A DNA stretch of 64,000 nt. It comes from Macrostomum lignano (lineage: Eukaryota). How positions within the stretch are numbered: the first letter of the stretch is position 1; every line of letters begins with the position of its first letter. Both the position numbers and the translations under genes were made by a program. Shown here piece after piece: positions 2,437-61,798 of the stretch. The stretch covers positions 1 through 64,000 of the forward strand of contig NIVC01000667.1 in assembly GCA_002269645.1 (NCBI GenBank), read 5' to 3'. Below the pieces are notes generated by a model, which had not been told where the DNA came from, did not search any database, and worked only from the letters and a program-made list of their open reading frames with translations.

Positions 2437-4392
2437 CTACAAATGCGTAGCATTGGTTGCAACGCTGGAGTCCGTAGGTAGTTGAACTACACTGACAGCC
2501 TTGAGCAGCACTGGTTTGCCAGTCGGGCCGACTCCTGAAGGGTGACTTCGACCAACAGATGCCAACTGGTGCGGCTGTTGCTGCTGCTGCTGCTGCAAAC
2601 TTTTCAACTTCTGTTGCATATCGTAGACGCTGTACACCGCGTACTTTCCTCGACTGCGCCGTCTGGCGTAGAAGAAGGCCACTCCGGTGACGACGCCCAG
2701 CAGGAGAGCAATGCCTAGAACGACGCAGGAGAAGAGCAAAGGCAGCTCTGGTGGGTACGGCAGATGTCCGTAGCCGTAGCCGTAGCCGTTGGCGCTGTCC
2801 TTCTCATCGTAGCAGAAGACGGTGCCGAGTCGCGATCGTCGGTGAATCGGCGACGACGACTGGAGAGACGTCTCGAAGCTGCACACCAGCTCGCTGGCGT
2901 CGGCTCGAAGGCAGCAGTCGCTCGACTGGGCGTCCAGGCGAAGTGCCGTGCCGCGCTGGAACAACAGCCCAACCAGATCGTCGATGGTCGGCCGTTGGCC
3001 TCTCCGACGAAGTCGCTCCATTGACGCGGCAGCGGCGTCGCCCTCGATGCGAATGGAGGCTGAGTGCAGGTGCTGCAGCCGTCTGATGGTCACAGAGGCC
3101 AACAAGTTTTCCGGCAGTTCGGACAGGTTCAAGTGCACTAGCCGAGGATTGCCGCTAATGTCCAGGTGAACCGATCGGTTATTGCCGTCGCTGTTTCTTA
3201 GAAACCTGTCAACCAGTTCGGCTGCTGCCGCCAAATTTGGCAACCAATTGTCGGCCAGAGACAGACGAAATCGACGACTGCTCAAATCCAAAGCGGCCGA
3301 TGGGTCAAACAGGCGAAAGCGAGTCAGCAGTGTTGACAGCTCGGCGTCACCGCCCCACAGTCCGGACAAGTCGAGAAGCTCGGACACGTAGATTTGCGAC
3401 AAAGTCTCGGACTCTGACGCTTTGAGCAGGTTGGAATTTTCGGCCAAATCTAAGCCAGAGAATCTCTGTCCAGCCAGCCTGTCCAACGCTTTCGGGCTGA
3501 GCTGATTGCGCCTCAACAGCAGGGTGGGCGATCCCGTGACCACAGCTCGGCAGACGCTTCCAGGCCGGAAGAAGACGTTCGGCAGGTCTACCAGTCGGTT
3601 TCCGCTCAGATCCGTTCGTCTAGCATTGAAGGTTACATTGGCCAGAGTGCGCAGGCGGTTGTCGCTGAAATCGATTGTGTCGCTGACGGCCAGCTGCGAG
3701 CTGCTGCCGGCCACGCCAACAAGATCGACGCCGTCTCTGGACACCAGGCCAGTCACGTAGATGCTGTTGAATCGTTTACTAGCGCAACTGTTCGCCCGGT
3801 GACTGGTGATACTGGCTGGTAGTTGATTTTCGTTCACCAGTTTCCAGCCAGTTATAGAGAATGTCTCCACTCGGAGGCTGTACATGTAGTCGGTGGCCTC
3901 GGTCAGGTCAAGCGGCTCAGAGACTGCGGTACCGTTGGCTGTGAGCATTCGGATGCTAATGAGCAGCTCGTCGGATGATGCAGTTTGAGCAGGTTGGAAC
4001 AATCGACCAGGCAGTGGCGCCAACTGCGTGCCACCAATGTCCAACTCGCCGATGTACAGTCCGTCCATGCGCTTGCCGGAAGCAACATCAACGCTGAAGC
4101 TGGTCAATTGTGGATTTCCGGACAAGTTCAGTAGAGCAATGTTTACCTGACGCCAGTCGAAGTTCGGACTTCGCGTAGTTGTAGCAGCGCCGTCAGTGAG
4201 ATCTTCGGAGTGAAAGATCAGAAGCAGGCGTCCCACTAGGCCTTGGTTGGATAGATCAATGTTGGTGACATTGTGCGGATAGACTGGTATGGAAGCTCCA
4301 GCGCCGGTTAGACCGCTGTCGATGGAGACTGACAGGACAGGTAGAAGCCGCAATAGAAACAACAGCAGTGGGGAGAACGCTTTGACCGTCAT
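2437..4392 (-). CDS. Intronless leucine-rich-repeat type I single-pass membrane protein (651 aa)
   Basis: Signal peptide MTVKAFSPLLLFLLRLLPVLSVS; LRR motifs IDLSNQGL, LNLSGNPQL, IDFSDNRLRTL, TDLSGNRLVDL, LDLAENSNL, LSLADNWLPNL, LDISGNPRL; TM LLFSCVVLGIALLLGVVTGVAFFYA followed by RRRSR; short tail with poly-Q, no TIR domain, ending ATHL (class I PDZ-ligand-like). Confidence 0.88.
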   Translation of the reverse strand: MTVKAFSPLLLFLLRLLPVLSVSIDSGLTGAGASIPVYPHNVTNIDLSNQGLVGRLLLIFHSEDLTDGAATTTRSPNFDWRQVNIALLNLSGNPQLTSFSVDVASGKRMDGLYIGELDIGGTQLAPLPGRLFQPAQTASSDELLISIRMLTANGTAVSEPLDLTEATDYMYSLRVETFSITGWKLVNENQLPASITSHRANSCASKRFNSIYVTGLVSRDGVDLVGVAGSSSQLAVSDTIDFSDNRLRTLANVTFNARRTDLSGNRLVDLPNVFFRPGSVCRAVVTGSPTLLLRRNQLSPKALDRLAGQRFSGLDLAENSNLLKASESETLSQIYVSELLDLSGLWGGDAELSTLLTRFRLFDPSAALDLSSRRFRLSLADNWLPNLAAAAELVDRFLRNSDGNNRSVHLDISGNPRLVHLNLSELPENLLASVTIRRLQHLHSASIRIEGDAAAASMERLRRRGQRPTIDDLVGLLFQRGTALRLDAQSSDCCLRADASELVCSFETSLQSSSPIHRRSRLGTVFCYDEKDSANGYGYGYGHLPYPPELPLLFSCVVLGIALLLGVVTGVAFFYARRRSRGKYAVYSVYDMQQKLKSLQQQQQQQPHQLASVGRSHPSGVGPTGKPVLLKAVSVVQLPTDSSVATNATHL

Positions 4393-7500: not shown

Positions 7501-8122
7501 CTGTATTCCAGGCATTCCAGGAATTCCAAGCTCGATTGGCAGATAACTATAGCTCGCCGGCTTAGACTTGAGTTGACGCTCTCACAAACGCATTGCATTT
7601 AGCCGTGATGCTGCAGGAGAGAGAGAAGAGAGGAGAGAGAGGAGAGGAGAGTCTGCAGACACACACGCGTACTGCATGAAAGCAATGTGCACTCAGACTC
7701 AAATTTGAATTGCTTTTCCTGAGCAATGCGGCTACCCTTGCAAGTGCAGTACTATAGCTAAAAACATGAGAGTCTAGCTCTCTTCACTATGCAGTTCGCA
7801 CCAATCCAACAGTTATATCTACCTACCGCATGAAATAACAAACACTGCAGGAATTCCATTCCTATGTGTTTTTTTTAACAAGTTTCCGAATTCTTTATAT
7901 TGTTTTCATTCGTTCGACTGTAAAATATACTTAGTTTTCCTGTCTTTTAAACGTTTTTAATGGTGTTGTTAAAAACGGACTCAGAATAGCTGGTAATGGT
8001 ATTTCCGAATGAAAGACAAGTTTTTATTGCTTTAACATTTTCCTGCTCCGCCAGCAAACTTCATACGTAGAATCGGAAAAGACGTCTTTACCGAAAGTTA
8101 GTGTGAATTGAGGACCTGATGA

Positions 8123-8760
8123 TCTAGTCTAATCTAATCTAATCTAATCTAATTCAGTCTAATCTAATCTAATCTAATCTAATCTAATCTAATCTAATCT
8201 AATCTAATCTAATCTAATTTAGTCTAATCTAATCTAATCTCATCTCATCTAATCTAATCTAATCTAGTCTAATCTAATCTAAAATAATCTAACCTAATCT
8301 AATCTGATCTCATCTTATTTAATCTAATCTAATCTAATCTAATCTAATCTAATCTAATCTGATCTAATCTAATCTAATCTAATCTAATCTAATCTAATCT
8401 AATCTAATCCGATTTGATCTGATCTGATCTAATCTAATCTAATCTAATCTAATCTAATCTAATCTAATCTAATCTTATCTAATCCGATTTGATCTGATCT
8501 GATCTAATCTAATCTAATCTAATCTAATCTAATCTAATCTAATCTAAACTAATCTAATCTAATCTAACCTAATCTAGTCTAATCTAATCTAAAATAATCT
8601 AACCTAATCTAATCTAATCTAATTTAGTACTCTAATCTAATCTAATCTGATCTCATCTGATCTAATCTAATCTAATCTAATCTAATCTAATATTATCTAA
8701 TCTAACCTAATCTTATCTTATCTAATCTAATATCTAATATAGTTTAATCTAATCTAATCT
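8123..8760. repeat. (AATCT)n pentanucleotide satellite
   Basis: Long aatct run with degenerate units. Confidence 0.95.
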
Positions 8761-9377
8761 TTAGTTGAATCTTATGTAATACTATCCTTATTTACTCCTG
8801 AATAATTTAATGTCATCTAACAAGCGTAAAATGCCAGAGAATGAATAAAATTGCGTCACAAATATCTAAGCATTTTTAGAGGTCTACCCAGTCGCGGTGT
8901 TGTTGCAAAAATTTACATGTAGATGATTCCGTTGAATTACTCACACTTAGATTTTAACACAAATATGGGCAACGGTACCTTTTTTGTAACCTAACTATAA
9001 CGAAACTTCAATAGCTATGGGTTAATTTCAGTTCAAGTCGCGGGAAAAAAGTTGCTACTAAACCTCTCAAACTTTTTCTCGATGCCAACAAAATGAAACC
9101 AACTACCTATAGCTACACCTATGGTCTCAAGCCTAATCGCTTCGCAATTAATGCATTCTTTCGTATAACTACACACTAGCCTAGGCTATTGATATTAGCA
9201 ATTATAATAACAGTTTGCAACAGCTAGGCCCCGCCGTTAACTGTCGAATAAATTAATATTGCTTGTTATTGAAACATAAAGTATAATTTGTTAATCTTAA
9301 CTGCCTTGGATGCAATTAGTTAGCATCAAACGCCGCGTGCTGCTGCGTGGGCGTGATTATTAAACTACAGTTCTCTC

Positions 9378-9391
9378 GTTTCCATGACAAC
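9378..9391. promoter_or_regulatory. RFX X-box-like motif GTTTCCATGACAAC
   Basis: 14/14 match to RYYNYYWWRRNRAC; preceded by ACTACAGTTCTC (ACTACAnnTCCC-like) and a CpG-rich patch. Confidence 0.4.
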
Positions 9392-9654
9392 GTATTGGCG
9401 TTGTGTAGTTCAACAAAAATGCGCTGGTAAAGTTCAAGGTGCGAACGGCACGGTTTGCACGACTAATTTTGAAATTATAGGCAAGCACGTTATGTTTTTA
9501 CTGACGTTCATCAATTCACCTGTTTATCAATTAGCTAATCAAGAAATGTTCAGGAAAAATGCAGTTGTTATTGTTGCATTTTGCCTGTTAATGATTGCTT
9601 GCTAGAATAGACATCTATCTTAGACAAAACAGAACAAATAGGAATCATGGATGA

Positions 9655-9968
9655 GGGTTGTATGTAGCCTAGCGGTTAGAGCGTCGGACTCCCGACTTGA
9701 AGGTCTGGGGTTCGATTCTCGACCAACTCGGAACAATGTGTCCTTGAGCAAGACACTTAACTCTGCATTGCTTCAGTTCACCCAGCTGTAAATGGATACC
9801 AGTGTTAGCTGGGGTAATTGAGGGTGTGTGTGGCGACCCCCAGTCCTTGGACTGAACAGCCGTACGCAGCCTTCAGATGCACCGCGCAATAGCTGCGGCT
9901 GAGCTGTCGGTTGCACATCTGCCCACTAGGGCAGTTGTTATCAATTATTATTAATATTATTATTCATT
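9655..9968 (+). mobile_element. tRNA-derived CORE-type SINE, full length
   Basis: A box TAGCCTAGCGG (9665), B box GGTTCGATTC (9709), CORE-like GTGTCCTTGAGCAAGACACTTAACTCT...CAGCTGTAAATGG, 3' stem-loop, (TTA)n tail; TSD ATGGATGA at 9647-9654 and 9969-9976. Confidence 0.88.
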
Positions 9969-11127
9969 ATGGATGAAGGAATATGTTGTATCATGGATTG
10001 CTCATCAGAGAAATGTCTGCGGCACTGACCCCACTACAATCTTGGGATGTCCCCCCGCTACAATTACTGAGTGAGTCTGTAAATACCCCACCCTACATCA
10101 CCACCCACCCCACCCCACTTACCCCACATCAACTTGATTGGTTTTAGCTTCAACGCGAGTATAGAAATGTTTTGTCATAAAAAGCAAATGTATACCGCCA
10201 AACTGGAGCTACAGCTCGATTGTCTATGGTAAATAGGGATATCGAATCATACAAATCGACACTTCTTTTAGTTCTATTTATATTTATTCGGACAACTTGG
10301 TGCTAAGAATCTGAAAACTTCCCAATCTCGCTGATGGGTCTTGGAAGAAACAAGCATAGAGATTTATTAGCAAAAATGGGTGTGTGGGCGTGAAAAAAGC
10401 GCTACAGTAGCTGGTTATATGAAAAACATCTGTTCAGCTACAGGCGCAGGGAGCTACAGGGACCGTTGCACCTGCGGTCGCAACTATAGCGAGACCACTA
10501 TACTTAATGCACTTGCGACGTGTAATTATGAAGCTTCCCACAGAGAGAGTAAACTTTGCTTCTAAACACTGTTGCAGGGGCACAGCTGCTTGAGTCTGTG
10601 GTTGCCTTCGTTTTCTTGTCTTTTTAATATAAATGCAATAAATGTGTTTACGGGTGCGCCCAGAATCTACGAGTCCATTCACACGCTGCAGTGATGGGTT
10701 TACAAAGTTTTCTTTTGCAAGCTTAATGTCTTAATGGGCTAATTTGAGTTTGAGAACTGCCTTAGAAGAAATTGATTAATGATAGAATTGTAGTTAGGTA
10801 TATTTAGGTAAGATTGAGCATCACAACTGAATGGTGTACAGGTATATTCAACTGTAGCTTAAAATAAATTCTTTAACATACTACTCTGCTTGATAAGTAG
10901 TTTAATTCGAAAATGAAAAACTTTTTATTATTAAATTTGTTGAACCTTGCCGTAGGATTCCATGAAATCCGCGAGATTAATATATTTCTTGACTTTCATA
11001 CGTTGACTGTATACGTTGTAAAAGCCGAGAATCTGGGACAATGTAAATGAAGTATATTTAGCATTATTGATCAACAGTATTCAATTCATAAATTGTCAGC
11101 GATAGAATAAAAAAAAGACTCAACCCA

Positions 11128-13760: not shown

Positions 13761-14784
13761 TAATCCGTACACGAATAAATAATCTGCATTTAAGCCTGTT
13801 CCTGATTGTTGGCATATCGAAGATACGCCAGTCTAATCAGTATTAAAAGTGCAGAGTCAGCATACTCGCTATAGTGGTGTTTCACTGAGAGACTTTCCTG
13901 CCGTTTTTCCTAAGCAGGCAAGAAACCTCCTCATCTCCCGCAAGTCCTATACCTCTACCGTTCACTCTTCTGTCCTGAAGGACTAAGGCCAAGTCTTAAA
14001 GCAACAACAATGTACAAACGGCAGGAGAAAGATGGCTGAGATGAGGATAGAGCAGAAAAGTTAGAGTGGGTAGAGAGAATTCTTGCCTGTACACTTCAGA
14101 ACGCCTCCCATTATCTCGTTTGCGTGCAGCAGCCTTCCTTTCCTATAGCCTGTGATCCAGCAACACTATTGTATGAAATTTCTGCATGGCAGAACAATTG
14201 ACACTGCGTCTGACTCGTAGCAGCCATTCCAAAATGAATTAATAAACACGTACAAAGATAGAAAACATTGCTTTCAGAGAATTTCCAGCTGGAGAATGAT
14301 GTACATAATGATTCTATTAAACAGTACCATAAAATTTCGGTTTCGTATATCATTAGCACTAAAGCTAACACAGAGAAGTTCTTGAAATGTACCTATTGAC
14401 CATTAGCTTATAATTGCAATGTAAACATTCAATAGTTTACTACTCGTGAAGTGTCCAGAAGATTTTAGGTTTACCGATCTGCTTCAATTATATATATATA
14501 TATAGTCGGTATTATTCAGATTGACGCAGATTATACCACAGCAGCGAAACTGTAGTGTGACCTACACAATATACTACAGATCAGTATAATAGTAATAACC
14601 AGACACTTTTGTCTGAAACTGCATGCTCGCAGCATTCAGCCAAAAATGTTTTCAGTTTTCTATTTTAGATATTCTTCGGTTTTCATGCAGCTACAGTAGA
14701 CATGCTTTAATAGAAGAGATGCGACTTTTAATTGCCAACCCTGGTTATAGAAATTTTACTCTTAAAGAAAAAATGGTCAGCCCT

Positions 14785-15172
14785 GCTGACTGACTGACTG
14801 ACTGACTGACTTGAGTGAGTGGGTGACTGACTGACTGACTGACTGACTTGAGTGAGTGGGTGACTGACTGACTGACTGACTGACTGACTGACTTGAGTGA
14901 GTGGGTGACTGACTGACTGACTGACTGACTGACTGACTGACTGACTGACTGACGGTCTGACTTGAGTGAGTGGGTGACTGACTGACTGACTGACTGACTT
15001 GAGTGAGTGGGTGACTGACTGACTGACTGACTGACTGACTGACTTGAGTGAGTGGGTGACTGACTGACTGACTGACTGACTGACTGACTGACTGACTGAC
15101 TGACGGTCTGACTTGAGTGAGTGGGTGACTGACTGACTGACTGACGACTGACTGACTGACTGACTGACTGAC
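14785..15172. repeat. (CTGA)n microsatellite with TTGAGTGAGTGGGTGA interruptions
   Basis: Direct reading; the same interruption occurs in the D2 copy. Confidence 0.95.
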
Positions 15173-15673
15173 TTTATCAATTAGATGGTATACAGACTCT
15201 GTCCACGGAGCGAGCTGCAGCAGCCACAGAGCGGCCATTGGCCATAGAGTGTTTCTCGTTTTGACTGTCCAAATTATCATTTAGATTGTCAAAAACAGTA
15301 CTTTCTAGTGGCTCATTCGTTTGTCTTATTTATTTATTTATTTATTTGGCCGGGACAAATAAATATCTTTTGCATTGGACCATTAACTTATTCGGGTATA
15401 AATCGATCGTTTGCACGAACTTTTAGGATGCCTCTCTGGAGTGAGAGAGAGGGAGAGAAAGAGAGAATGTACGTAGCACGATCTAGTTGCAGTGGATGGG
15501 AGGCTGAGCTACAGAAATGGAATTAAGTCCGCGGACCAATAGAAATGGTTGGAATAAACAGCCAGCTACGTATATGAACACGACCATTCATAACCATTAG
15601 AAGCCAGCTCTTAGATCTGTGAACAATACCACGAGCCTCAATACTTTGACCTGCACTGCAGCATCAACACGCC

Positions 15674-16909
15674 ATGGCAAGCAGTAGTCTAATTCTAAGG
15701 ATACTGAGTGTGAGACGGATTGCCATGTTTGGCACTCTGCTGCTGATGCTCATGTTCATCAACTTTTACTCGCGACCGCTCAAGCACTGCAACTGCGCCA
15801 ACCATCTCGAAGGAAGTCACTCAGTCTCGAGTGACTCCCAATTTGATAACTCAGCCGTCAAATCACAGATCGATAATTTGGAAACCCGCAAAAGTCCCGA
15901 CGTTAAATCGGCGAAGAAGTTTGTCAACGATTTCAAAGCCGGCTACGAGGCATTCTATCGTTATCAGAATAAGTCTCTCTATCAGGTTCAGAAAGATACA
16001 CGGTTGCCGTTGCTACGACTCTCGGAGGCTGAGAACGACGTTAAGTACCGCACTAAGATGGGCAAGCAGTGGATGCAAGAGAAAACTGCCGTCTTTGTTG
16101 GCACCGCTAGAAATGCAAAAGACCATCTGCCGAGGAACATAAAAGACATTCATCGCTTGGGTAAACTGTTCAAGGACTACTGGATCGTGTTCGTTGAGAA
16201 CGACTCAAAAGACGGTACCAGAGAGTTCCTTATTGGCGTGGTCAAGCAGTATAACAAGACCATCATTCTGGGTTGCGAGCCCATCAACTCACCCGCTGAA
16301 TGTCACATCGACATCAAGTACCGCTCCGGTAAGATTCACAAACCGGGATGGGCTCAGAAGCGCAACGAGGAAGAATTTGTTGACCGAGGTGTAACAATGA
16401 GCATACTGCGCAACATGATTCTGGATTACATCTACGCCAATCTAGCTGACAAGGCCGACCTCATGATCGCCATTGAGCCCGACATCTCTTGGCACCCGTG
16501 GAATCTTGACAACATTGCCCAGGGGATCTACTACTTCAGCACGAGGCCTCAGCTCGATCTTCTCTGCGCCAACGGTCGTCTTTGGGGTAAGATCTACGAT
16601 CCATGCTCGAGGACGTACTATTCAATGAAGAAGTTCACCAATGTGGATGACAACGATAAAACGTTCGTTACTGACGCAATGGCCGTAGAGAAAAACAAGA
16701 TACCGATCAAGGTGGATTCCTGCTTTCAGGCGTTCGCTATTCATCGCATCAGCAGTCTGGTGAAGCACAATGCTCACTACTACCTAGCGCCTGGCGAGAG
16801 GAACTGTGAGCACAACACGTTGGCTAGACAGCTGCCAGAGAGGTACATTGACCCGGTCATGTGGCTTGACATCTACTCTCTAGTAGTCCACAGCAGAGAC
16901 CGTTGGTGA
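15674..16909 (+). CDS. Intronless type II membrane GT-A glycosyltransferase, CAP59/GT69 (cryptococcal mannosyltransferase)-like (411 aa)
   Basis: N-terminal anchor IAMFGTLLLMLMFINFY plus stem; motifs VFVGTARN, IVFVENDSKDGT, MSILRNMILDY, IAIEPD (DxD position), IYD, PIKVDSCFQAFAI, CEH, YIDP; Kozak-like GCCATGG; 1236-bp uninterrupted ORF. Confidence 0.75.
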   Translation: MASSSLILRILSVRRIAMFGTLLLMLMFINFYSRPLKHCNCANHLEGSHSVSSDSQFDNSAVKSQIDNLETRKSPDVKSAKKFVNDFKAGYEAFYRYQNKSLYQVQKDTRLPLLRLSEAENDVKYRTKMGKQWMQEKTAVFVGTARNAKDHLPRNIKDIHRLGKLFKDYWIVFVENDSKDGTREFLIGVVKQYNKTIILGCEPINSPAECHIDIKYRSGKIHKPGWAQKRNEEEFVDRGVTMSILRNMILDYIYANLADKADLMIAIEPDISWHPWNLDNIAQGIYYFSTRPQLDLLCANGRLWGKIYDPCSRTYYSMKKFTNVDDNDKTFVTDAMAVEKNKIPIKVDSCFQAFAIHRISSLVKHNAHYYLAPGERNCEHNTLARQLPERYIDPVMWLDIYSLVVHSRDRW

Positions 16910-18632
16910 TGCTTGTGCCAATACGCTGCGCGTTAATTCTTGATATTTTGATGATCCCTGAACTCAGATATATACTTCTATTGGTATTCCACTTTTCTCA
17001 CTTTCTTTGCCTCATAAAAGCAGTACGCTGAAACTCATACTTAATTTGTCATTGTATTAGATGTTGTATTTTGTGCCTTGAAGTTTTCCTGACCGATTTA
17101 TCAAAGATATCGACTGAAAATAAAAGGCACTCAATGGAATGTACGAGCAAATTTATTGCGTTTGTTGCTGCCATCAGCGTAAAAATTGATATCTGAAGTA
17201 CACGTATTCCCGAGCAACATTTCAACGTGTCGACGAATTGATGGATACCGTTGTCAAATGGGAGTATTTTTACGTTATGTCGGGAGATAATGACGTCGTA
17301 CGTCGGCTGAACGTCGATATTTTGTAAATCTACCCATTCGTACAGCGACGTCGATAAATGTCGAATAAATAAGTAGCATTTAAGCCTGTTCCTGATTGTT
17401 ATCATGTCGAAGATACGCCGGTCTACTCAGGGTTAAAAGTGCGGGGCTATTATAGTGGCGTTTCTCCGAGAGACTTTCCTGGTTTTTTTCCTAGGCAGGC
17501 AAGACACCTCATCTCCCGCCAGTACTATACGAGCTACATCTACTGTTCACTCTTCTTTACAGAGAGGATCCGGCTCTGAGTGTCCCCCCCCCCCCCAGTC
17601 TGAGATCCGTCCACACGCGCGGCATTGAGAAATAACCCACCGGCTTTCCACACTTGTTTCTGGCGCCTAGGCAACGGTCCTGAAGGACTAAGGCTGAGTC
17701 TTAAAGGGACAATGTACAAACGGCAGGAGAAAGATGCTGAGATGAGGATAGAGCAAAAAAATTAGTGGTTGGTAAGAGAAAATTTTAGCCTGTGTACACT
17801 TCAAAACGCCCGGGCAGCCTGAAAGACTCCCAGCATTATCCCGGGTGCAGCATGCAGCCCTTCCGTTCCTATAGCCTGTGTTTTAGCTACCTTCTGTTGC
17901 ATGCCAAATTTCTGCAAAGTAAAACAATGACACCGCGTCTGACTCGTAGCAGCCATTCTGTTACGGTTGAAGAACACGAAGGCACTTGGGTTTATGAATT
18001 GAAGGAGGGCGTTATTTGAGCAGCTCCAAATTGGCATGTGCACGAAGCTCGCTCTTATATTTCTTTACCCTTAAGGGCATTGAAGTTTCTAGCAAACAAG
18101 GTGTACGGTAACATTTTGCCCCGATGGCACATAGACTACTTTTAGAAGAAAATAAATCTATGAATAATTCAGCATAGCATGCAGCATATGCAACACATTC
18201 CGAAATATGAGTTAATAAACACGTAAGAGGCAGAAAATTTGCTAGCTGGAGAATAACGCACATTTATTATTCTAGCTGTACCATAATATTTTGGTTTCGT
18301 ATGTCGTTACCACTAAAGCAGGCACAGAGTTCTTCAAATGTACGTATTGACCATGCACAAGGTTATAATTATACCGGTAATGTAAACATTTAATAGTTTA
18401 ATATAAAAGTGTCTAGAAGATTTTGGGTTTACCGATCTGCTTTAACTGTGTGTGCATATCTGTAGCCTATATTATTCAGATTGATGCAGCTCAATACCAC
18501 AGCAGTGTGTCTGTAGAGTGTGACTTACAATATACTATAGTTTAATATTTAGCAGAAATCAGCTAAAATGCTTTGGTTTTGTATACTCGCCGTTTTGATA
18601 TAATATATACTGTAGCTACAGTGGGTTTGATT

Positions 18633-18681
18633 CAGGGACAACTAAAACCCTGAAGACCTGTCAACCTTTTAGTTGTCCCTG
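18633..18681. mobile_element. Ultra-short (49-bp) hAT-like TIR element
   Basis: Perfect 15-bp TIR CAGGGACAACTAAAA / TTTTAGTTGTCCCTG; flanks GTTTGATT and GCTTGATT (7/8 match, 8-bp TSD). Confidence 0.65.
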
Positions 18682-18702
18682 GCTTGATTTTAGAGAAGAG
18701 TT

Positions 18703-18965
18703 GTGACTGACTGACTGACTGACTGACTGACTGACTGACTGACTGACTGACTGACTGACTGACTGACTTGAGTGAGTGGGTGACTGACTGACTGACTGAC
18801 TGACTGACTGACTGACTGACTGACTGACTGACTGACTGACTTGAGTGAGTGGGTGACTGACTGACTGACTGACTGACTGACTGACTGACTGACTGACTGA
18901 CTGACTGACTGACTGACTGACTGACTGACTGACTGACTGACTGACTGACTGACTGACTGACTGAC
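18703..18965. repeat. (CTGA)n microsatellite of D2
   Basis: Direct reading. Confidence 0.95.
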
Positions 18966-19589
18966 TTTTCTGTTCACAGATTTAATCTGCGCTTAAATGT
19001 CACTGACTACGGCTGATTCCGAAATTAACTACTCAAGACTGACAGGACTCTTGTAGCAATTGAAAGCGCAGAAGTTTAGATACGCATGTGTCAACCGCAA
19101 TGAAAAACTATTTCACTTTTCTATTCCTATTGCCAGGCCTTTTATATTTATGCACCTTTCAGTGAGGCAAGTTGCTTTCGTTGAATTATCTATTGAATGA
19201 AAACAGTTTAAATCTCGTGGATCGTTTAGGTTCAGCGAAGCGAAAAACTTCCAAAAAGACCATTTGTGATGCTTCTGTCTGGCGTGCTGAAGCGACAAGC
19301 AGTCAAACGCATGCTCATGAGACAGATCGCGTGCTAGCACTAAGCAATAAAGTATGAAGCTGTCAAGAGCGTCACGCCTCGTTCAACGCAGACATTCAAT
19401 CTGAAATGTTAAAACCTGCTACAGAACTTGTCATTGTCCTGTAGCCACTTCAGATCCAAAGTCCATGTATCCGCAATTTCAACGTGTACCTTAAGCTTTC
19501 GCTGTACTCAAGCTCTAAAAGCCTAATCAACCTATAGAACTTGAGAAATGTCTGCAAAGACAACCGCAGGAAAGGAATCCGAGTCTGGC

Positions 19590-29039: not shown

Positions 29040-30245
29040 CCAAGGATTCTCCCAGACATTCTGATTATCTCAATACCTCAGACATCCCCATTCTCCCAAA
29101 TCCTTAGACATCCCCATTTTCCCAAATCCCAGACATCCCCATTCTCCCAAATCCTTAGACATCCCCATTTTCCCAAATCCTCAGACATCCCCATTTTCCC
29201 AAATCCCAGACATCCCCATTTTCCTAAATCCTCAGACATCCCCATTTCCCAAATCCCAGACATCCCCATTTTCCCAAATCCCAGACATCCCCATTCTCCC
29301 AAATCCTTAGACATCCCCATTTTCCCAAATCCTCAGACATCCCCATTTTCCCAAATCCCAGACATCCCCATTTTCCCAAATCCCAGACATCCCCATTCTC
29401 TTCTCCCAAATCCTTAGACATCCCCATTTTCCCAAATCCTCAGACATCCCCATTTTCCCAAATCCCAGACATCCCCATTTTCCCAAATCCTTAGACATCC
29501 CCATTTTCCCAAATCCTCAGACATCCCCATTTTCCCAAATCCCAGACATCCCCATTCTCCCAAATCCTTAGACATCCCCATTTTCCCAAATCCCAGACAT
29601 CCCCATTTTCCCAAATTCCAGACATCCCCATTCTCTTCTCCCAAATCCTTAGACATCCCCATTTTCCCAAATCCTCAGACATCCCCATTTTCCCAAAAAT
29701 CCCAGACATCCCCATTTTCCCAAATCCTTAGACATCCCCATTTTCCCAAATCCCAGACATCCCCATTTTCCCAAATCCCAGACATCCCCGTTCTCCCAAA
29801 TCCTTAGACATCCCCATTTTCCCAAATCCTCAGACATCCCCATTTCCCAAATCCCAGACATCCCCATTTTCCCAAATCCCAGACATCCCCATTCTCCCAA
29901 ATCCTCAGACATCCCCATTGTCCCAAAATCCTCAGACATCCTCATTTTCCCAAATCCTCATACATCCCCATTGTCCCAAAATCCTCAGACATCCCCATTC
30001 TCCCAAATCCCAGACACCCCCATTTTCCCAAATCCTCAGACATCCCCATTCTCCCAAATCCTTAGACATCCTCATTTTCCCAAATCCTCATACATCCCCA
30101 TTGTCCCAAAATCCTCAGACATCCCCATTCTCCCAAATCCTCAGTCAAGCATCCCTATTGTCCCAAAATCCTCAGACATCCTCATTTTCCCAAATCCTCA
30201 TACATCCCCATTGTCCCAAAATCCTCAGAATTCCCATTATCCCAA
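29040..30245. repeat. ~25-bp minisatellite (CAGACATCCCCATTTTCCCAAATCC) in SCAP intron 1
   Basis: Direct reading; source of the MGMSEDLGKWGC ORFs. Confidence 0.95.
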
Positions 30246-30275
30246 ATGACAATCTCTGTTATTTTCTCCGCGCAG

Positions 30276-32165: not shown

Positions 32166-32349
32166 TCGTTGGTCATACAGGTTAAACCGCTTCATGGATC
32201 CTATTGGTCAAAATAATTGAATTTTGGTCATAGATATCGGACATTTAAGCCATCGTAAACTGCTTTGGGTCATAATGCTCATATTTAAAAAAAATCGGTC
32301 ATTAGTCTTTGGTCATAAAAGGTGATTGCAATCCTTCACTTAATCGCAG

Positions 32350-33224
32350 GCAAAATCCAGATGGTGAAGAGCAAGTGGGGCTTAGCCTTTGGCGCCTGTT
32401 TCACCGTGGTGGCCTCTCTGCTAATGTCCGTGGGAGTCTGCATGTATTTTGGCATCGCGCCAAGTCTGAACGGTTCGGAAACCTTTCCCTATCTGGTTGT
32501 ACTGATAGGCATGGAGAATGTTTTGGTCATCACCAAGTCGGTTGTGAGCACCCCAGTTGAATTGGAGGTCAGGCACAGGGTTGCCGTGGGCTTGAGCAAA
32601 GAAGGCTGGACCATCACTCGCAGCCTGGTTGCGGAGGTCGGCCTGCTGAGTCTGGGTTTGTTATCCTTCAACACCAGCATCCAAGAGTTCGCCCTGTTCG
32701 CTGTAGTCGGTCTGTGTACAGATTTCTTTCTGCAGATGTTCTTCTTTGTCACTATATTGGCTATCGATATCAAGCGAATGGAACCGTTGCCTGTGGCTAA
32801 GCAGAGGACTGCTAATCTGCTTCAACAGCAGCAGCAACTGAAGCAGCAAGACCAACAACAACAAAAGCAGCAATCTATACAGCAGGTTCCTCAAGACCTG
32901 GCTGTCACCCTTGGCTGCGACGAGTCTATAGAAGACAATAACAGTGATTCGAAACCGGCGACTGCTCAGACTGCATCGGATTCTGCTGAGCAGCTGCGCA
33001 AGCTTCATCAATTCCATCATATGCATAGGCGACAGCCTTCCGATGCTAATACTGCCGCCTTCTTGATGCATTCGTTGACTGCTGCGGCAACTTCGGCTCC
33101 AGCTAGTGCTAGTGTGGACTCCGCACCTGCTGTTCCAAGGCGGATTCGAGTTCTGTACTACTTGGCTAGCAAACGGCTGGCTTTGCGATTGCTGCTTTTG
33201 GTACTGTGCGTCTGGCTGCTGCAG
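32350..33224 (+). CDS. SCAP: SCAP coding exon 5 (sterol-sensing domain TM3-6, loop 6, TM7)
   Basis: cgcag|[13 protein letters not shown]...[29 protein letters not shown]...[35 protein letters not shown]; donor CAG|GTGAGA. Confidence 0.95.
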
Positions 33225-33289
33225 GTGAGACTGGGGGGTGAGGAGTCTGGGAAAAAGATATCTGAGAATCTTTGTGAATGGGATCTGAG

Positions 33290-33745
33290 AATCTCGGGAG
33301 ATGGGATCTAGGAATCTCAGGAGATAGGATCTCAAAATCTCGGGTAATGGGATCTCAGAATCTCAGGAGATAGGATCTCAAAATCACAGATGGGATCTCA
33401 GAATCTCGAGAGATGGGATCGCAGAATCTCGAGAGATGGGATCTCAAAATCTCGAGAGATGGGATCTCAAAATCTCGAGAGATGGGATCTCAGAATCTAG
33501 GGAGATGGGATCTCAGAATCTAGGGAGATGGGATCTAATAAACAGCTTGAGATTCTTCGAAACTTTGCCCACTCACACTAGACTCCAAAGTATCTCACAC
33601 TAGACTCCAAAGTATCTCACACTAGACTCCAAAGAATCTCACACTAGACTCAAAAGAATCTCACTCTAGACTCAAAAGAATCTCACACTAGACTCCAAAG
33701 AATCTCACACTAGACTCCAAAGAATCTCACTCTAGACTCAAAGGA
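33290..33745. repeat. Two minisatellites in SCAP intron 5 (GATGGGATCTCAGAATCTCGAGA-type and 22-bp CACACTAGACTCCAAAGAATCT-type)
   Basis: Direct reading; the second family recurs in intron 7. Confidence 0.88.
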
Positions 33746-36093: not shown

Positions 36094-36810
36094 GTAAGCC
36101 ACGCGACATCGCTTTCCCCATCGCAAGCTGCATCAACGGACTCAGACTTGGCAGCCGCAAGTGAAGCTGTCCCATCAAATTCCGGCTTAAATCCAGCATC
36201 CCCAACTCAAACCTTATCTTCCTCATCAATTTGGTGCATGAGTCTCATTACTAACGATACGGATTCGCGCTATCTGCTTGTTGGCTGCTCAGACGGTCAC
36301 CTGGAGCTGTGGGATTTCACCTGTACCGATTCTGCAAAGTGCCGAATTCAATTATCAGCTGAGGGTCTGACTCACCTGACTGTACAGCAGAGTCAGTTAG
36401 TTGCTGTGGCAGCTACGGCTACAGGCATGCTGCACTGCGTTCGACTGCTTCTCGACGCTGATCGAATTGAACCGCTGTCGTCTTGCCGGGCGTCGCCTCT
36501 GCCGTTGCACTCGATGCTGATCTGGCCGGATTCCGGCCACGGCGACCTGCTGGCCACGGCCGGTGAAGATAATTTAATTCGATTCTTTTCTATAGGGGAG
36601 CTGTGCAAGATCCGGCAGCCGCAGCAGCAGCTGAGCAATAATGGAGCTGTTGGTGCCGGGGCGGCCGCGGCGGCTGCTGCGGCTGCTGCTGCTGCTGGGG
36701 CGGCTTCGTTTTGCACGGTGGTGTCGGCGCACGCGGCGCCTGTGCTGGATCTGGCCGCCTATCCTAGCAGGGGAGTGCTCAGCGGGGGTGCCGATGGAGC
36801 CGTGTTTCAG
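36094..36810 (+). CDS. SCAP: SCAP coding exon 8 (WD40 repeats)
   Basis: ttttccag|VSH...SIWCMSL...LLVGCSDGHLELWDF...LLATAGEDNLIRFF...SAHAAPVLDL...LSGGADGAVFQ|gtgagt; phase 0 on both sides. Confidence 0.85.
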
Positions 36811-37089
36811 GTGAGTACCGACTGGGACCAAATAGAGGTACTTAAAATCGCTTATATTATCGATTCTCTGGATTCTAATTTTCTCATTATCGATTATTAT
36901 TGTGCTGAATTATTGGTTATCGATGCTTTGATTAATCTGTTGCGTTAATTATCGATTGTAACATTTATTAATTATCGAATTTAAATACTCCAATCAGTTA
37001 ATTATGGATTTTGAGTTGCCGAAATTCGTAAATTATCTATTCTAAATAACGAATTTTGTATCACTGAACTCGTTAATTATCGGTTCTGA

Positions 37090-43946: not shown

Positions 43947-46458
43947 TGAGATGGGGAATCTAGTATGGGGGAGATGGGGAATCTAGTATGGGGGAGACGG
44001 GGAATCTAGTATGGGGGAGATGGGGAATCTAGTATAGGGGAGATGGGGAATCTAGTATAGAGGAGATGGGGAATCTAGTATAGGGGAGACGGGGAATCTA
44101 GTATAGGGAAGATGGGGAATCTAGTATAGGGGAGGTGGGGAATCTAGTATGGGGGAGGTGGGGAATCTAGTATAGGGGAGGTGGGGAATCTAGTATGGGG
44201 GAGATGGGGAATCTAGTATAGGGGAGGTGGGGAATCTAGTATGGGGGAGGTGGGGAATCTAGTATAGGGGAGACGGGGAATCTAGTATGGGGGAGATGGG
44301 GAATCTAGTATAGGGGAGATGGGGAATCTAGTATAGAGGAGATGGGGAATCTAGTATAGGGGAGACGGGGAATCTAGTATGGGGGAGATGGGGAATCTAG
44401 TATAGGGGAGGTGGGGAATCTAGTATGGGGGAGATGGGGAATCTAGTATAGGGGAGATGGGGAATCTAGTATGGGGGAGGTGGGGAATCTAGTATAGGGG
44501 AGGTGGGGAATCTAGTATGGGGGAGATGGGGAATCTAGTATAGGGGAGGTGGGGAATCTAGTATGGGGGAGGTGGGGAATCTAGTATAGGGGAGATGGGG
44601 AATCTAGTATGGGGGAGATGGGGAATCTAGTATAGGGGAGATGGGGAATCTAGTATAGAGGAGATGGGGAATCTAGTATAGAGGAGATGGGGAATCTAGT
44701 ATAGGGGAGACGGGGAATCTAGTATAGGGGAGATGGGGAATCTAGTATAGGGGAGATGGGGAATCTAGTATAGGGGAGATGGGGAATCTAGTATAGAGGA
44801 GATGGGGAATCTAGTATAGGGGAGACGGGGAATCTAGTATGGGGGAGATGGGGAATCTAGTATAGGGGAGGTGGGGAATCTAGTATGGGGGAGATGGGGA
44901 ATCTAGTATAGGGGAGGTGGGGAATCTAGTATGGGGGAGGTGGGGAATCTAGTATAGGGGAGGTGGGGAATCTAGTATGGGGGAGATGGGGAATCTAGTA
45001 TAGGGGAGGTGGGGAATCTAGTATGGGGGAGATGGGGAATCTAGTATAGGGGAGGTGGGGAATCTAGTATGGGGGAGGTGGGGAATCTAGTATAGGGGAG
45101 ATGGGGAATCTAGTATGGGGGAGATGGGGAATCTAGTATAGGGGAGATGGGGAATCTAGTATAGAGGAGATGGGGAATCTAGTATAGAGGAGATGGGGAA
45201 TCTAGTATAGGGGAGACGGGGAATCTAGTATAGGGGAGATGGGGAATATAGTATAGGGGAGATGGGGAATCTAGTATAGGGGAGATGGGGAATCTAGTAT
45301 AGAGGAGATGGGGAATCTAGTATAGGGGAGACGGGGAATCTAGTATGGGGGAGATGGGGAATCTAGTATAGGGGAGGTGGGGAATCTAGTATGGGGGAGA
45401 TGGGGAATCTAGTATAGGGGAGGTGGGGAATCTAGTATGGGGGAGGTGGGGAATCTAGTATAGGGGAGATGGGGAATCTAGTATGGGGGAGATGGGGAAT
45501 CTAGTATAGGGGAGATGGGGAATCTAGTATAGAGGAGATGGGGAATCTAGTATAGGGGAGACGGGGAATCTAGTATGGGGGAGATGGGGAATCTAGTATA
45601 GGGGAGATGGGGAATCTAGTATAGGGGAGGTGGGGAATCTAGTATAGGGGAGACGGGGAATCTAGTATGGGGGAGATGGGGAATCTAGTATAGGGGAGAT
45701 GGGGAATCTAGTATACAGGAGGTGGGGAATCTAGTATAGGGGAGTTGGGGAATCTAGTATAGGGGAGATGGGGAATCTAGTATAGGGGAGATGGGGAATC
45801 TAGTATAGGGGAGGTGGGGAATCTAGTATACAGGAGGTGGGGAATCTAGTATAGGGGAGTTGGGGAATCTAGTATAGGGGAGATGGGGAATCTAGTATAG
45901 GGGAGATGGGGAATCTAGTATACAGGAGGTGGGGAATCTAGTATAGGGGAGATGGGGAATCTAGTATAGGGGAGGTGGGGAATCTAGTATAGGGGAGGTG
46001 GGGAATCTAGTATAGGGGAGATGGGGAATCTAGTATAGGGGAGGTGGGGAATCTAGTATAGGGGAGGTGGGGAATCTAGTATAGGGGAGGTGGGGAATCT
46101 AGTATAGGGGAGGTGGGGAATCTAGTATAGGGGAGGTGGGGAATCTAGTATAGGGGAGGTGGGGAATCTAGTATAGGGGAGGTGGGGAATCTAGTATAGG
46201 GGAGATGGGGAATCTAGTATAGGGGAGGTGGGGAATCTAGTATAGGGGAGGTGGGGAATCTAGTATAGGGGAGGTGGGGAATCTAGTATAGGGGAGGTGG
46301 GGAATCTAGTATAGGGGAGGTGGGGAATCTAGTATAGGGGAGATGGGGAATCTAGTATAGGGGAGGTGGGGAATCTAGTATAGGGGAGGTGGGGAATCTA
46401 GTATAGGGGAGGTGGGGAATCTAGTATAGGGGAGGTGGGGAATCTAGTATAGGGGAAT
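43947..46458 (+). repeat. 23-bp G-rich satellite (GGGGAATCTAGTATAGGGGAGAT), ~109 units; left arm of an inverted pair
   Basis: Direct reading; begins with a unique TGAGATGGGG terminus. Confidence 0.96.
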
Positions 46459-57799: not shown

Positions 57800-58106
57800 C
57801 ACACCAACCATCTGCAGATTACACACCAACCATCTGCAGATTACACACCAACCATCTGCAGATTACACACCAACCATCTGCAGATTACACACCAACCATC
57901 TGCAGATTACACACCAACCATCTGCAGAATTACACACCAACCATCTGCAGATTACACACCAACCATCTGCAGATTACACACCAACCATCTGTAGATTACA
58001 CACCAACCATCTGCAGATTACACACCAACCATCTGCAGATTACACACCAACCATCTGCAGATTACACACCAACCATCTGTAGATTACACACCAACCATCT
58101 GCAGAG
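57800..58106. repeat. 22-bp minisatellite (GATTACACACCAACCATCTGCA) overlapping the GPCR stop codon
   Basis: On the minus strand each unit reads CTGCAGATGGTTGGTGTGTAAT = LQMVGV*. Confidence 0.95.

Positions 58107-60762: not shown

Positions 60763-61798
<1,036 letters not shown>

What the first reader, a model, noticed from the sequence alone, without database searches (positions are those of the whole stretch)
15674..16909. CAP59/GT69-like glycosyltransferase of microbial/viral motif type in an animal genome
Seen: an intact intronless ORF with a Golgi-type type II anchor and the motif series GTARN / ENDSKDGT / LRN / EPD / YD / VDSCF / CEH. Known (from recall, unsearched): this motif set typifies fungal CAP59/Cmt1 mannosyltransferases and related bacterial and giant-virus glycosyltransferases, not core animal GT families. 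The usual DxD is EPD here. Inference: possible horizontally acquired and domesticated enzyme making an unusual surface or mucus glycan.
Basis: partly seen in the sequence, partly recalled or inferred. Interest (0 to 1): 0.7.

Follow-up and report, generated by a model that had tools for sequence, protein, structure and literature searches.

The report
Virus-type glycosyltransferase gene in a flatworm
An intact, intronless flatworm (Macrostomum lignano) gene encodes a membrane-anchored sugar-adding enzyme whose only named animal relatives are its own paralogues and whose next-closest relatives sit in giant-virus and bacterial genomes, so it is a good but unproven candidate for an old horizontal gene acquisition.

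Summary
Window 15674-16909(+) is an intact 411-aa ORF with an N-terminal membrane anchor, and every listed motif is present. It is 99% identical to a Macrostomum lignano hypothetical protein and lies in genuine animal chromosome.

The family call is right only by transitive homology. The query has no Pfam CAP59_mtransfer (PF11735) hit. It matches, at E 1e-20 to 1e-29, ~320-aa proteins that do pass that model's threshold, and 59 of 68 aligned relatives match it.

The predicted fold is GT-A, with E268-P-D270 exactly where the DxD sits. There is no close solved structure. The best viral structural match is a Marseillevirus glycosyltransferase.

All named homologues are M. lignano, in at least 8 paralogue groups. 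These form one clade with 100% bootstrap support. One paralogue has a GT-AG intron, and codon usage is host-like.

The nearest non-flatworm relatives lie on giant-virus MAGs or compact virus-like contigs. More distant ones are bacterial. The tree backbone is unresolved, so neither donor nor direction can be named.

No sign of a broad metazoan family or an ordinary animal GT family was found.

Verdict: a likely functional Golgi glycosyltransferase of a viral/bacterial-type CAP59-like subfamily. It was probably acquired horizontally long ago and then expanded. Substrate and biological role are unknown.

The parts
15674..16909 (+). Complete single-exon CDS (411 codons plus stop) of a type II membrane GT-A glycosyltransferase. 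It is an allelic or homeologous copy of M. lignano BOX15_Mlig011967g2.
   Evidence: ORF. 99% identity to P0001. Single-exon gene model. The locus is colinear with NIVC01002515.1 at 92-98% identity, with 11 nt differences in the ORF. dN/dS is 0.31.
15674..15772 (+). Short cytoplasmic tail (R9, R14, R15) and signal-anchor transmembrane helix, aa 1-33.
   Evidence: Hydropathy maximum at aa 10-31. AlphaFold helix at 4-33. Viral and metagenome relatives also start with a hydrophobic N-terminus (alignment).
15773..15973 (+). Stem region, aa 34-100. It is poorly conserved, largely disordered, and longer than in viral or metagenome relatives.
   Evidence: pLDDT below 50 for aa 37-85. The alignment shows no counterpart in the ~320-aa relatives.
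15974..16888 (+). GT-A catalytic domain, aa ~101-405.
   Evidence: pLDDT is mostly above 90. Foldseek matches only GT-A enzymes in PDB. The top BFVD match is a Marseillevirus LCMAC102 glycosyltransferase at E 3e-22 and TMt 0.79. phmmer matches cover aa ~113-400.
16193..16222 (+). Motif VENDSKDGTR (aa 174-183) at the end of strand beta-2. It is the counterpart of the nucleotide-binding acidic motif of GT-A and GT2-like enzymes.
   Evidence: E175 N176 S178 D180 are invariant and D177 T182 R183 are at least 90% conserved in 68 sequences. This stretch gives the sub-threshold Glycos_transf_2 match. Strand 168-175 is in the model.
16475..16483 (+). E268-P269-D270, the DxD-equivalent (putative metal and NDP-sugar site) directly after strand beta-4.
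   Evidence: D270 is invariant and position 268 is D in at least 90% of family members. The other M. lignano paralogues have DPD. E also occurs at this position in P0008 and P0123. Strand 263-267 precedes it in the model.
16805..16813 (+). C378-E379-H380 motif near the C-terminus. H380 is a candidate third metal ligand, which is an inference.
   Evidence: Invariant in the 15-sequence alignment and at least 90% conserved in 68 sequences. The role is inferred from general GT-A knowledge and was not measured.
13772..15173 (.). Upstream copy of a repeat block (unique part plus a (CTGA)n-type satellite) that recurs downstream of the gene.
   Evidence: Direct repeat families D1, D2, D5 and D7 with spacing of about 3.6 kb and 82-86% identity in the unique parts. 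Tandem repeat at 14786-15173.
17362..18966 (.). Downstream copy of the same repeat block.
   Evidence: satellite at 18704-18966. No second GT copy follows it.

Best explanation
The ORF encodes a functional type II (Golgi or secretory-pathway) membrane glycosyltransferase with a GT-A fold.

Proposed mechanism (inferred):
- A short cytoplasmic tail and signal anchor (aa 1-33) hold a flexible stem and a luminal catalytic domain.
- The VENDSxDxTR segment after beta-2 binds the nucleotide of an NDP- or GDP-sugar.
- The E268-x-D270 carboxylates, probably with H380, hold a divalent cation and the diphosphate.
- The sugar is transferred to a glycan, glycoprotein or glycolipid acceptor.
- The conserved luminal cysteines probably form disulfides.

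Family and origin:
- It belongs to a subfamily distantly related to fungal CAP59/Cmt1 (Pfam PF11735, CAZy GT69). The other members of this subfamily are found mainly on giant-virus genomes or virus-like contigs, and more distantly in bacteria.
- In M. lignano it is one of at least 8 diverged paralogue groups that descend from a single ancestral gene.
- That ancestor most likely entered the flatworm lineage by horizontal transfer long ago. The donor is unresolved; a giant virus is the best guess by similarity.
- It then took on host codon usage, gained an intron in one paralogue, and expanded by duplication, partly in tandem.

Shown: ORF integrity, homology, predicted fold, motif conservation, genomic integration, paralogue monophyly, the taxonomic make-up of relatives.
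Inferred: catalytic activity, metal ligands, Golgi location, horizontal origin.
Unknown: donor sugar, acceptor, tissue.
For: - ORF and motifs.
- Topology and GT-A fold: the core has pLDDT above 90, and EPD follows beta-4. PDB matches are all GT-A enzymes.
- Homology: 468 relatives at E<=1e-3. Relatives P0008 and P0010-P0013 pass the PF11735 cut-off. 59 of 68 aligned members match PF11735.
- Viral affinity: the top BFVD match is a Marseillevirus LCMAC102 glycosyltransferase (E 3e-22, 30% identity, TMt 0.79), and the next match is ten orders of magnitude weaker. There are 47 IMG/VR loci, including GVMAG contigs and 346-380 kb genomes. Every metagenome contig I inspected that was long enough to show neighbouring genes (L001, L002, L003, L074, L075, L076) is compact, intronless and ORFan-rich, with RING, ankyrin, kinase, DVNP, Fapy-glycosylase and further GT genes. 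Mean identity to the flatworm clade is 31-35% for the best viral loci and at most 29% for bacterial ones.
- Integration and age: animal genes in the window. The locus is colinear in a second assembly contig. Paralogues lie on contigs of up to 832 kb next to cyclophilin, MFS-transporter and WTAP genes. There is a GT..AG intron in P0004. Codon usage is host-like, with RSCU r of 0.63-0.84 against -0.47 to 0.43 for viral homologues. The paralogues form a clade with 100% bootstrap support and share only 37-62% identity between groups.
- Constraint: dN/dS is 0.31 between the two near-identical copies, and all family-invariant residues are intact.
- Restricted distribution: all named hits are M. lignano.
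Against: - The query itself has no PF11735 hit.
- The first DxD aspartate is Glu only in this paralogue, so its activity could be altered.
- The phylogeny does not nest the flatworm clade inside any donor group. The sister group has 17% support and the backbone is star-like.
- Only 30 of the 150 listed relatives could be checked for source or name, and most are anonymous metagenome proteins. Cellular eukaryotic (protist) or other animal members cannot be excluded.
- Fragments 53-64% identical to one paralogue group come from unidentified samples.
- dN/dS rests on only 11 substitutions.
- No expression data were available.
- Giant viruses often take genes from eukaryotes, so similarity to viral genes does not give the direction of transfer.
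Confidence: 0.6

Rival explanations
1. Vertical inheritance. An ancient eukaryotic (for example opisthokont) CAP59-like gene was kept in the macrostomid lineage and lost in nearly all other animals. Under this reading the giant-virus copies were captured from eukaryotic hosts.
For: - PF11735 is a fungal (opisthokont) family (PMC8092235).
- The flatworm clade is old and internally deep.
- Its position in the tree is unresolved.
- Many relatives are anonymous and could be protists.
- Codon usage is fully host-like.
Against: - No named animal, fungal or protist protein appeared among the hits that were looked up, and only M. lignano carries names.
- Flatworm proteins score at most 27.6 bits on the fungal-based Pfam model but E 1e-20 to 1e-29 against the viral-type proteins.
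- It would require very many independent losses.
- Three of the four gene models examined are intronless.
Confidence: 0.2
2. Horizontal acquisition from a bacterium rather than from a giant virus.
For: - Family members occur in real bacterial chromosomes and glycan gene clusters.
- The identity difference between the best viral (about 34%) and best bacterial (about 29%) relatives is modest.
- The tree is unresolved.
Against: - The top 150 phmmer hits are dominated by ~320-aa proteins with an N-terminal anchor, like the viral ones. Every longer contig inspected for these hits was virus-like.
- 12 of 14 bacterial sequences fall in a separate, more distant cluster.
- The best structural and sequence match among named proteins is viral.
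Confidence: 0.15
3. This particular paralogue is a catalytically altered or inactive member (pseudo-enzyme, lectin-like or regulatory) because the first DxD aspartate is Glu.
For: Position 268 is Asp in at least 90% of the family and in all other M. lignano paralogue groups. Only this gene and its allelic copy have Glu.
Against: - Glu keeps the carboxylate.
- The same change occurs independently in P0008 and P0123.
- All other invariant residues are kept.
- dN/dS is 0.31.
- ExD-type variants of the motif occur in active GT-A enzymes (general knowledge, not tested here).
Confidence: 0.1
4. Contamination or assembly artefact: the gene belongs to a virus, bacterium or food organism and not to the worm.
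For: The closest non-flatworm relatives are viral or metagenomic.
Against: - The ORF is embedded in 64 kb holding animal genes (SCAP-like, GPCR, LRR receptor) and M. lignano-type satellites.
- The same locus is present in an independent contig at 92-98% identity.
- Paralogues lie on contigs of up to 832 kb beside animal genes, and one has a spliceosomal intron.
- Codon usage is host-like.
Confidence: 0.01

Closest known systems
Giant-virus glycosyltransferases of the PF11735-like type, for example 'Glycosyltransferase [Marseillevirus LCMAC102]' (UniProt A0A481YUL9), homologues on GVMAG contigs, and homologues on 346-380 kb IMG/VR genomes
   Same: They share the GT-A catalytic domain over its whole length at 25-34% identity, with the same invariant residues (END-S-D-TR, RN, DxD, D309, CEH) and an N-terminal hydrophobic anchor.
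   Different: The flatworm proteins are 60-90 aa longer because of a stem region. They carry a 29-aa loop between C210 and R238, against 16-18 aa typically. They are encoded in an animal chromosome with host codon usage. This copy has ExD instead of DxD.
Fungal CAP59/Cmt1 family (Pfam PF11735 CAP59_mtransfer; CAZy GT69): Golgi alpha-1,3-mannosyltransferases that use GDP-mannose (PMC8092235)
   Same: Predicted secretory-pathway membrane protein with a GT-A-like catalytic domain. Close relatives of the query pass the PF11735 threshold over nearly the whole model, positions 1-232 of 242.
   Different: The query does not reach the model at all and its paralogues stay below the cut-off. No fungal sequence was available from the tools for a direct comparison. 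Donor sugar and linkage are unknown here.
Bacterial PF11735-like or GT2-like glycosyltransferases in polysaccharide gene clusters (for example Lewinella MAG contig CAJXOS010000016.1 and Spirochaetia chromosome OZ244590.1)
   Same: Homologous catalytic domain at 23-28% identity over aa ~126-396. The L053 copy lies among glycan-modifying genes.
   Different: They are more distant and some are fused to extra domains (519-550 aa). They form a largely separate cluster.
Animal GT-A families with solved structures (COLGALT1/GT25, ppGalNAc-T/GT27)
   Same: Same general GT-A fold and DxD logic.
   Different: Only 8-14% identity with TM about 0.4 and no Pfam match. The gene is not a member of these families.

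Membership tests
Pfam PF11735 CAP59_mtransfer / CAZy GT69 | Whole-protein score above the Pfam gathering cut-off (28.8 bits) | tested here: not met
   The query has no PF11735 hit even at E<=10. Paralogue P0003 scores 27.6 bits, P0002 scores 17 and P0006 scores 16.7.
Pfam PF11735 CAP59_mtransfer / CAZy GT69 | Significant direct homology to proteins that do pass the cut-off (transitive membership in the superfamily) | tested here: met
   Query against P0008, P0010, P0011, P0012 and P0013 gives E 2e-29 to 1e-20. These score 31-46 bits on PF11735. 59 of 68 aligned members match at E<=1e-3.
Pfam PF11735 CAP59_mtransfer / CAZy GT69 | Specific relatedness to fungal Cmt1/CAP59 proper | not tested
Pfam PF11735 CAP59_mtransfer / CAZy GT69 | GDP-mannose-dependent alpha-1,3-mannosyltransferase activity (PMC8092235) | not testable with these tools
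   This is a biochemical property. Sequence divergence is too great to infer donor or linkage.
GT-A fold, metal-dependent glycosyltransferases | Rossmann-like alpha/beta/alpha domain with an acidic DxD-type motif at the end of beta-4 and an acidic nucleotide-binding motif after beta-2 | tested here: met
   The AlphaFold model has a core pLDDT above 90, with strands 138-145, 168-175, 196-199 and 263-267, and E268-P-D270 directly after the last. Foldseek gives 211 PDB matches at E<=0.001, and all 50 listed matches are glycosyltransferases. This rests on prediction, not experiment.
GT2 (Pfam PF00535 Glycos_transf_2) | Score above the gathering cut-off (23.3 bits) | tested here: not met
   13.6 bits at E 0.063, over aa 145-196 only.
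Ordinary animal GT-A families (GT7, GT13, GT25, GT27, GT31 and others) | Pfam match or close structural and sequence similarity | tested here: not met
   No Pfam match. The best PDB matches have TMq of 0.36-0.42 and 8-14% identity.
Type II Golgi-resident glycosyltransferase architecture | Short cytoplasmic tail, single N-terminal signal anchor, stem, luminal catalytic domain | tested here: met
   Met at the level of sequence and model. Actual localisation is not testable here.
Horizontally acquired gene in an animal | Physically integrated in the host genome and not contamination | tested here: met
Horizontally acquired gene in an animal | Absent from other animals, with a patchy distribution | tested here: inconclusive
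   All named hits are M. lignano. However, only 30 of the 150 listed hits were looked up, and anonymous fragments of the flatworm-type clade exist in unidentified samples. A metagenome scan with a flatworm-only alignment found nothing.
Horizontally acquired gene in an animal | Nested with support inside a donor clade | tested here: not met
   In a neighbour-joining tree of 207 sequences with 100 bootstraps, the flatworm clade has 100% support. Its sister group has 17% and the backbone is near 0%. No likelihood tree could be run.

The most novel reading that the evidence does not exclude
An ancestor of Macrostomum captured a giant-virus glycosyltransferase. The gene was domesticated as a Golgi enzyme and amplified into at least 8 diverged paralogue groups, giving this flatworm lineage a set of glycan-building activities that other animals lack. 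These might act, for example, in adhesive, mucus, rhabdite or egg-coat glycans.
Probability: 0.3. Interest if true: 0.6.

Novelty: new member of a known kind. Interest (0 to 1): 0.45.

Why it matters
If the horizontal origin holds, this would be a clear case of a viral or microbial-type glycosyltransferase becoming a multi-gene family in a bilaterian laboratory model.

- Such cases show how animals gain new glycan chemistry.
- Here the family could be followed with the existing M. lignano transcriptomic and in situ resources.
- It would also add an animal branch to a family (PF11735-like) that has no solved structure and almost no characterised members outside fungi.

If the origin is instead vertical with massive loss, the interest is smaller: a relict enzyme family.

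Tried and rejected
1. Pfam and NCBIfam on the query gave nothing usable. A PDB sequence search gave only chance hits.
2. A profile search of the 5.8-billion-protein index with a 68-sequence alignment returned only 4 proteins. The word index did not reach the distant relatives, so names had to come from cluster look-ups of 30 proteins.
3. The first genome-contig scan with the large alignment failed for lack of a conserved stretch. It was repeated with a 15-sequence alignment.
4. The neighbour-joining phylogeny did not resolve the sister group. A possible shared long loop with P0008 (27 aa, 'HKPG') and with P0139 (26 aa, DPD) was examined. P0008 lies on a contig of only 1.3 kb, and P0139 on a virus-like contig. 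This is too weak to call a synapomorphy.
5. A metagenome scan for flatworm-type members found nothing.
6. I tried to confirm from papers that the 346-380 kb IMG/VR genomes are Marseilleviridae isolates. The exact lengths were not found. Only the 340-390 kb range appears in the abstract of PMC7695187, so the identification rests on my recollection plus the BFVD hit.
7. Literature searches for this gene, for glycosyltransferases in Macrostomum, and for CAP59 in marseilleviruses found nothing relevant.
8. Contamination was considered and rejected.
9. The idea that the flanking 3.6-kb-spaced repeats mark a tandem duplication containing a second GT copy was rejected, because no second copy exists in the window.
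Full report
**Observation.**
The window has an ATG-to-stop ORF at exactly 15674-16909 on the + strand, 411 aa. They are not arbitrary. In a 68-sequence alignment of relatives, E175, N176, S178, D180, R246, D270 and D309 are invariant. R146, D177, T182, R183, N247, D268, S349, F351, C378, E379 and H380 are at least 90% conserved.

The N-terminus has basic residues followed by a hydrophobic stretch. The AlphaFold2 model, built on a 15-sequence alignment, has mean pLDDT 76 and a core mostly above 90. It shows one helix at 4-33, a disordered stem at 37-85, and then a compact alpha/beta domain.

**Whose genome, and is the gene really part of it?**
The protein is 99% identical to Macrostomum lignano BOX15_Mlig011967g2.

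- The window holds 45 tandem-repeat rows with score of at least 200; overlapping rows with different periods describe the same array.
- It also holds animal-type coding sequence: a sterol-sensing-domain exon (32322-33311) and a WD40 exon (36148-36948) that together look like SCAP, a rhodopsin-type GPCR (58084-59751, minus strand), and a weak PTB-domain exon.
- There is also a 651-aa ORF with a signal peptide, leucine-rich repeats and a transmembrane segment (2437-4392, minus strand).
- The locus is colinear with GenBank contig NIVC01002515.1 at 92-98% identity. The ORF differs at 11 of 1236 nt, with 5 synonymous and 6 non-synonymous codons. Nei-Gojobori dN/dS is 0.31.
- That GenBank gene model is a single exon.
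- Codon usage resembles the native ORFs of the window (GC3 0.64; RSCU r = 0.63) and not the viral homologues (r from -0.47 to 0.43).

Contamination is therefore excluded.

**Family assignment.**
The query alone matches no Pfam family above threshold. It has only a 13.6-bit Glycos_transf_2 hit over aa 145-196 and no CAP59_mtransfer hit at all. NCBIfam and a PDB sequence search gave nothing.

A full phmmer scan of 1.84 billion representative proteins found 468 relatives at E<=1e-3, of which 110 are at E<=1e-10. The best are M. lignano paralogues. Next come proteins of about 300-340 aa at 30-35% identity and E 1e-29 to 1e-20. Several of these pass the PF11735 gathering cut-off of 28.8 bits: P0008 at 32.8, P0010 at 31.3, P0011 at 40.8, P0012 at 45.8 and P0013 at 46.0, covering model positions 1-232 of 242. 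Of the 68 aligned members, 59 match PF11735 at E<=1e-3. The flatworm paralogues fall just short, with P0003 at 27.6 bits.

The gene fails the formal Pfam test. It belongs to a subfamily that is far from the fungal sequences on which that model is largely based (my recollection of the Pfam model's seed, not checked). I could not compare it directly with a fungal Cmt1/CAP59 because no tool returned one.

What is known of GT69 comes from PMC8092235. Cmt1 is a GDP-mannose alpha-1,3-mannosyltransferase, family members localise to the Golgi, and an Aspergillus homologue mannosylates GPI anchors.

**Fold and active site.**
Foldseek against the PDB returns only GT-A enzymes, such as COLGALT1, RmlT, ppGalNAc-transferases and TarP, with TMq of 0.36-0.42 and 8-14% identity. 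The fold is therefore GT-A, and no close relative has been solved.

In the model the strands are 138-145, 168-175, 196-199 and 263-267. VENDSKDGTR ends the second strand, which is the usual place of the nucleotide-binding acidic motif. E268-P-D270 follows the fourth, which is the usual place of the DxD.

Position 268 is Asp in at least 90% of the family and in every other M. lignano paralogue group (DPD). Glu occurs in this gene, in its allelic copy, and independently in P0008 and P0123. I read this as a conservative variant, not a loss of function.

I infer from general GT-A knowledge that H380 of the conserved CEH motif may be a further metal ligand. I could not measure distances in the model. 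Six cysteines lie in the catalytic domain (C201, C210, C298, C311, C350, C378). All six are invariant among the flatworm paralogues, and C201, C210 and C378 are conserved across the wider family. This suits a luminal, disulfide-bonded enzyme.

**Relatives in the flatworm.**
Named homologues are all from M. lignano. They are the query/P0001 group, P0002, P0003, the P0004 group, the P0005/P0157/P0159 group, P0176, P0177 and P0006, plus a 646-aa model that joins a RING domain to the GT domain.

- Identities between groups are 37-62%.
- The six representatives form a clade with 100% bootstrap support on a long branch.
- P0001, P0002 and P0157 are single-exon. P0004 has one GT..AG intron of about 674 nt, largely made of a 20-bp satellite.
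- A second family copy lies about 7 kb upstream of P0002, so some duplication was tandem.
- Neighbours of the paralogues are animal genes: cyclophilins, an MFS transporter and WTAP.
- All flatworm proteins share a 29-aa loop between C210 and R238, against 16-18 aa in most relatives.

**Other carriers of the flatworm-type clade.**
Four short anonymous fragments are 53-64% identical to the P0157 group: P0007 and P0015 from sequencing-run assemblies, and P0125 and P0178 from JGI metagenomes. They are less similar to the other groups. They therefore come from some other organism that has an orthologue of that paralogue group, perhaps another macrostomid. The GC3 of the P0007 fragment (0.78) is close to that of P0157 (0.76). 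Their source organisms could not be identified. A metagenome scan with a flatworm-only alignment found nothing more.

**Relatives outside flatworms.**
- Against predicted viral structures, the top match is 'Glycosyltransferase [Marseillevirus LCMAC102]' at E 3e-22, TMt 0.79 and 30% identity. The next match is at 3e-12.
- A pattern scan of IMG/VR found 47 loci. They include contigs named GVMAG and seven genomes of 346-380 kb. Those lengths lie in the range the abstract of PMC7695187 gives for Marseilleviridae. I recall that several equal published isolate genome lengths, but I could not verify this.
- Of the metagenome contigs I fetched for close relatives, two (those of P0007 and P0008) are only 1.2-1.3 kb and show no informative neighbours. 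Every contig long enough to show neighbours is compact, intronless and rich in ORFans, with genes typical of giant viruses. Examples are ankyrin, RING, AAA and FtsJ genes, Fapy-DNA glycosylase, Ser/Thr kinases, poly(A) polymerase, DVNP with thymidylate synthase on a 240-kb contig, and further glycosyltransferases.
- A scan of one genome per prokaryotic species found 15 loci in bacterial MAGs and in a 2.36-Mb Spirochaetia chromosome, at 23-28% identity. Two of these were checked and are in ordinary bacterial or glycan-cluster context.
- Mean identity to the flatworm clade over 241 trimmed columns is 31-35% for the best viral loci and at most 29% for bacterial loci.
- In the neighbour-joining tree, 12 of 14 bacterial sequences fall in one loose cluster. 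The backbone has essentially no support, and the nominal sister of the flatworm clade (P0008) has 17%.

**Interpretation.**
The most likely reading is a working Golgi-type GT-A glycosyltransferase. It is one member of a lineage-specific family that descends from a single gene of the viral/bacterial-type CAP59-like subfamily. The patchy distribution favours horizontal acquisition:
- named homologues are found only in M. lignano;
- there is no hit to any ordinary animal GT family;
- the nearest relatives are on giant-virus and bacterial genomes;
- three of the four gene models examined are intronless.

The deep paralogue divergence, host-like codon usage and one acquired intron say the event was old. 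The donor is not established. Similarity points to giant viruses. However, such viruses also capture host genes, many relatives are anonymous, and the tree is unresolved.

Vertical descent with massive loss remains possible; I give it about 0.2. Substrate, product and tissue are unknown, and the 'surface or mucus glycan' idea is untested. I found no paper describing this family in Macrostomum or linking CAP59-like enzymes to marseilleviruses. GenBank calls the protein hypothetical, and UniProt labels some paralogues as generic GT2-like.

**Verdict.**
It is a new member of a known kind of enzyme with an interesting, probably horizontal, origin. Interest is 0.45.

Noticed in passing
window 2437-4392 (-): An intact 651-aa ORF with a signal peptide, leucine-rich-repeat-like ectodomain, one transmembrane segment and a Gln-rich tail. 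It has no Pfam hit at E<=0.01 and looks like an intronless LRR receptor-type gene.
   Followed up: partly
window 32322-33311 (+) and 36148-36948 (+): A sterol-sensing-domain exon (PF12349, E 2e-43) and a WD40 exon about 3 kb downstream. Together they look like a SCAP-type gene interrupted by satellite-filled introns.
   Followed up: partly
window 58084-59751 (-): A single-exon rhodopsin-family GPCR (PF00001, E 3e-45).
   Followed up: partly
window, whole length (for example 43948-46456, 53162-54597, 29076-30247, 60764-61798): Extreme density of tandem repeats and satellites: 45 tandem-repeat rows with score of at least 200 in 64 kb (overlapping rows can describe the same array). Many of them create long spurious ORFs on both strands.
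   Followed up: no
window 13772-15173 and 17362-18966: The GT gene is bracketed by two direct copies of a repeat block. The unique parts are 82-86% identical, each block carries a (CTGA)n-type satellite, and the spacing is about 3.6 kb. No second GT copy follows. The origin of the block (dispersed repeat or remnant of a duplication) is not established.
   Followed up: partly
L070 (NIVC01000572.1), gene at 8001-9904: The P0004 paralogue has one canonical GT..AG intron of about 674 nt inside the catalytic domain, made mostly of a 20-bp tandem repeat. A satellite insertion may have become an intron, or an intron may have been invaded by a satellite.
   Followed up: partly
L069 (NIVC01002680.1), 1-711 and 8001-9176: A second family copy lies about 7 kb upstream of the P0002 gene, which indicates tandem duplication of the family.
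   Followed up: no
P0179 (UniRef A0A1I8FAJ4, M. lignano, 646 aa): A gene model annotated as a RING-type E3 ubiquitin transferase contains a GT domain 38% identical to P0157. It is either a real fusion or a merged gene model.
   Followed up: no
L025 (IMG/VR 360,610-bp genome), homologue at 9839-10844: In this one viral genome the homologue is split into two overlapping ORFs (one frame break), while the six related 346-380 kb genomes have it intact.
   Followed up: no
L005 (Logan SRR31628434 contig, 1193 bp): Two adjacent ORFs in different frames both match the family (one break). This could be an assembly error, a pseudogene or a short intron in the unidentified organism that carries a flatworm-type orthologue.
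   Followed up: no
L003 (GCA_050043615.1, JBNHEI010002746.1): A 23-kb contig at 27% GC in an NCBI assembly carries the GT next to GT25, pyruvyl-transferase, PAPS-reductase, PLOD-type GT, RING and an 1802-aa xanthine-dehydrogenase-like gene. It is a glycan-rich, virus-like region inside or alongside an unidentified genome.
   Followed up: no
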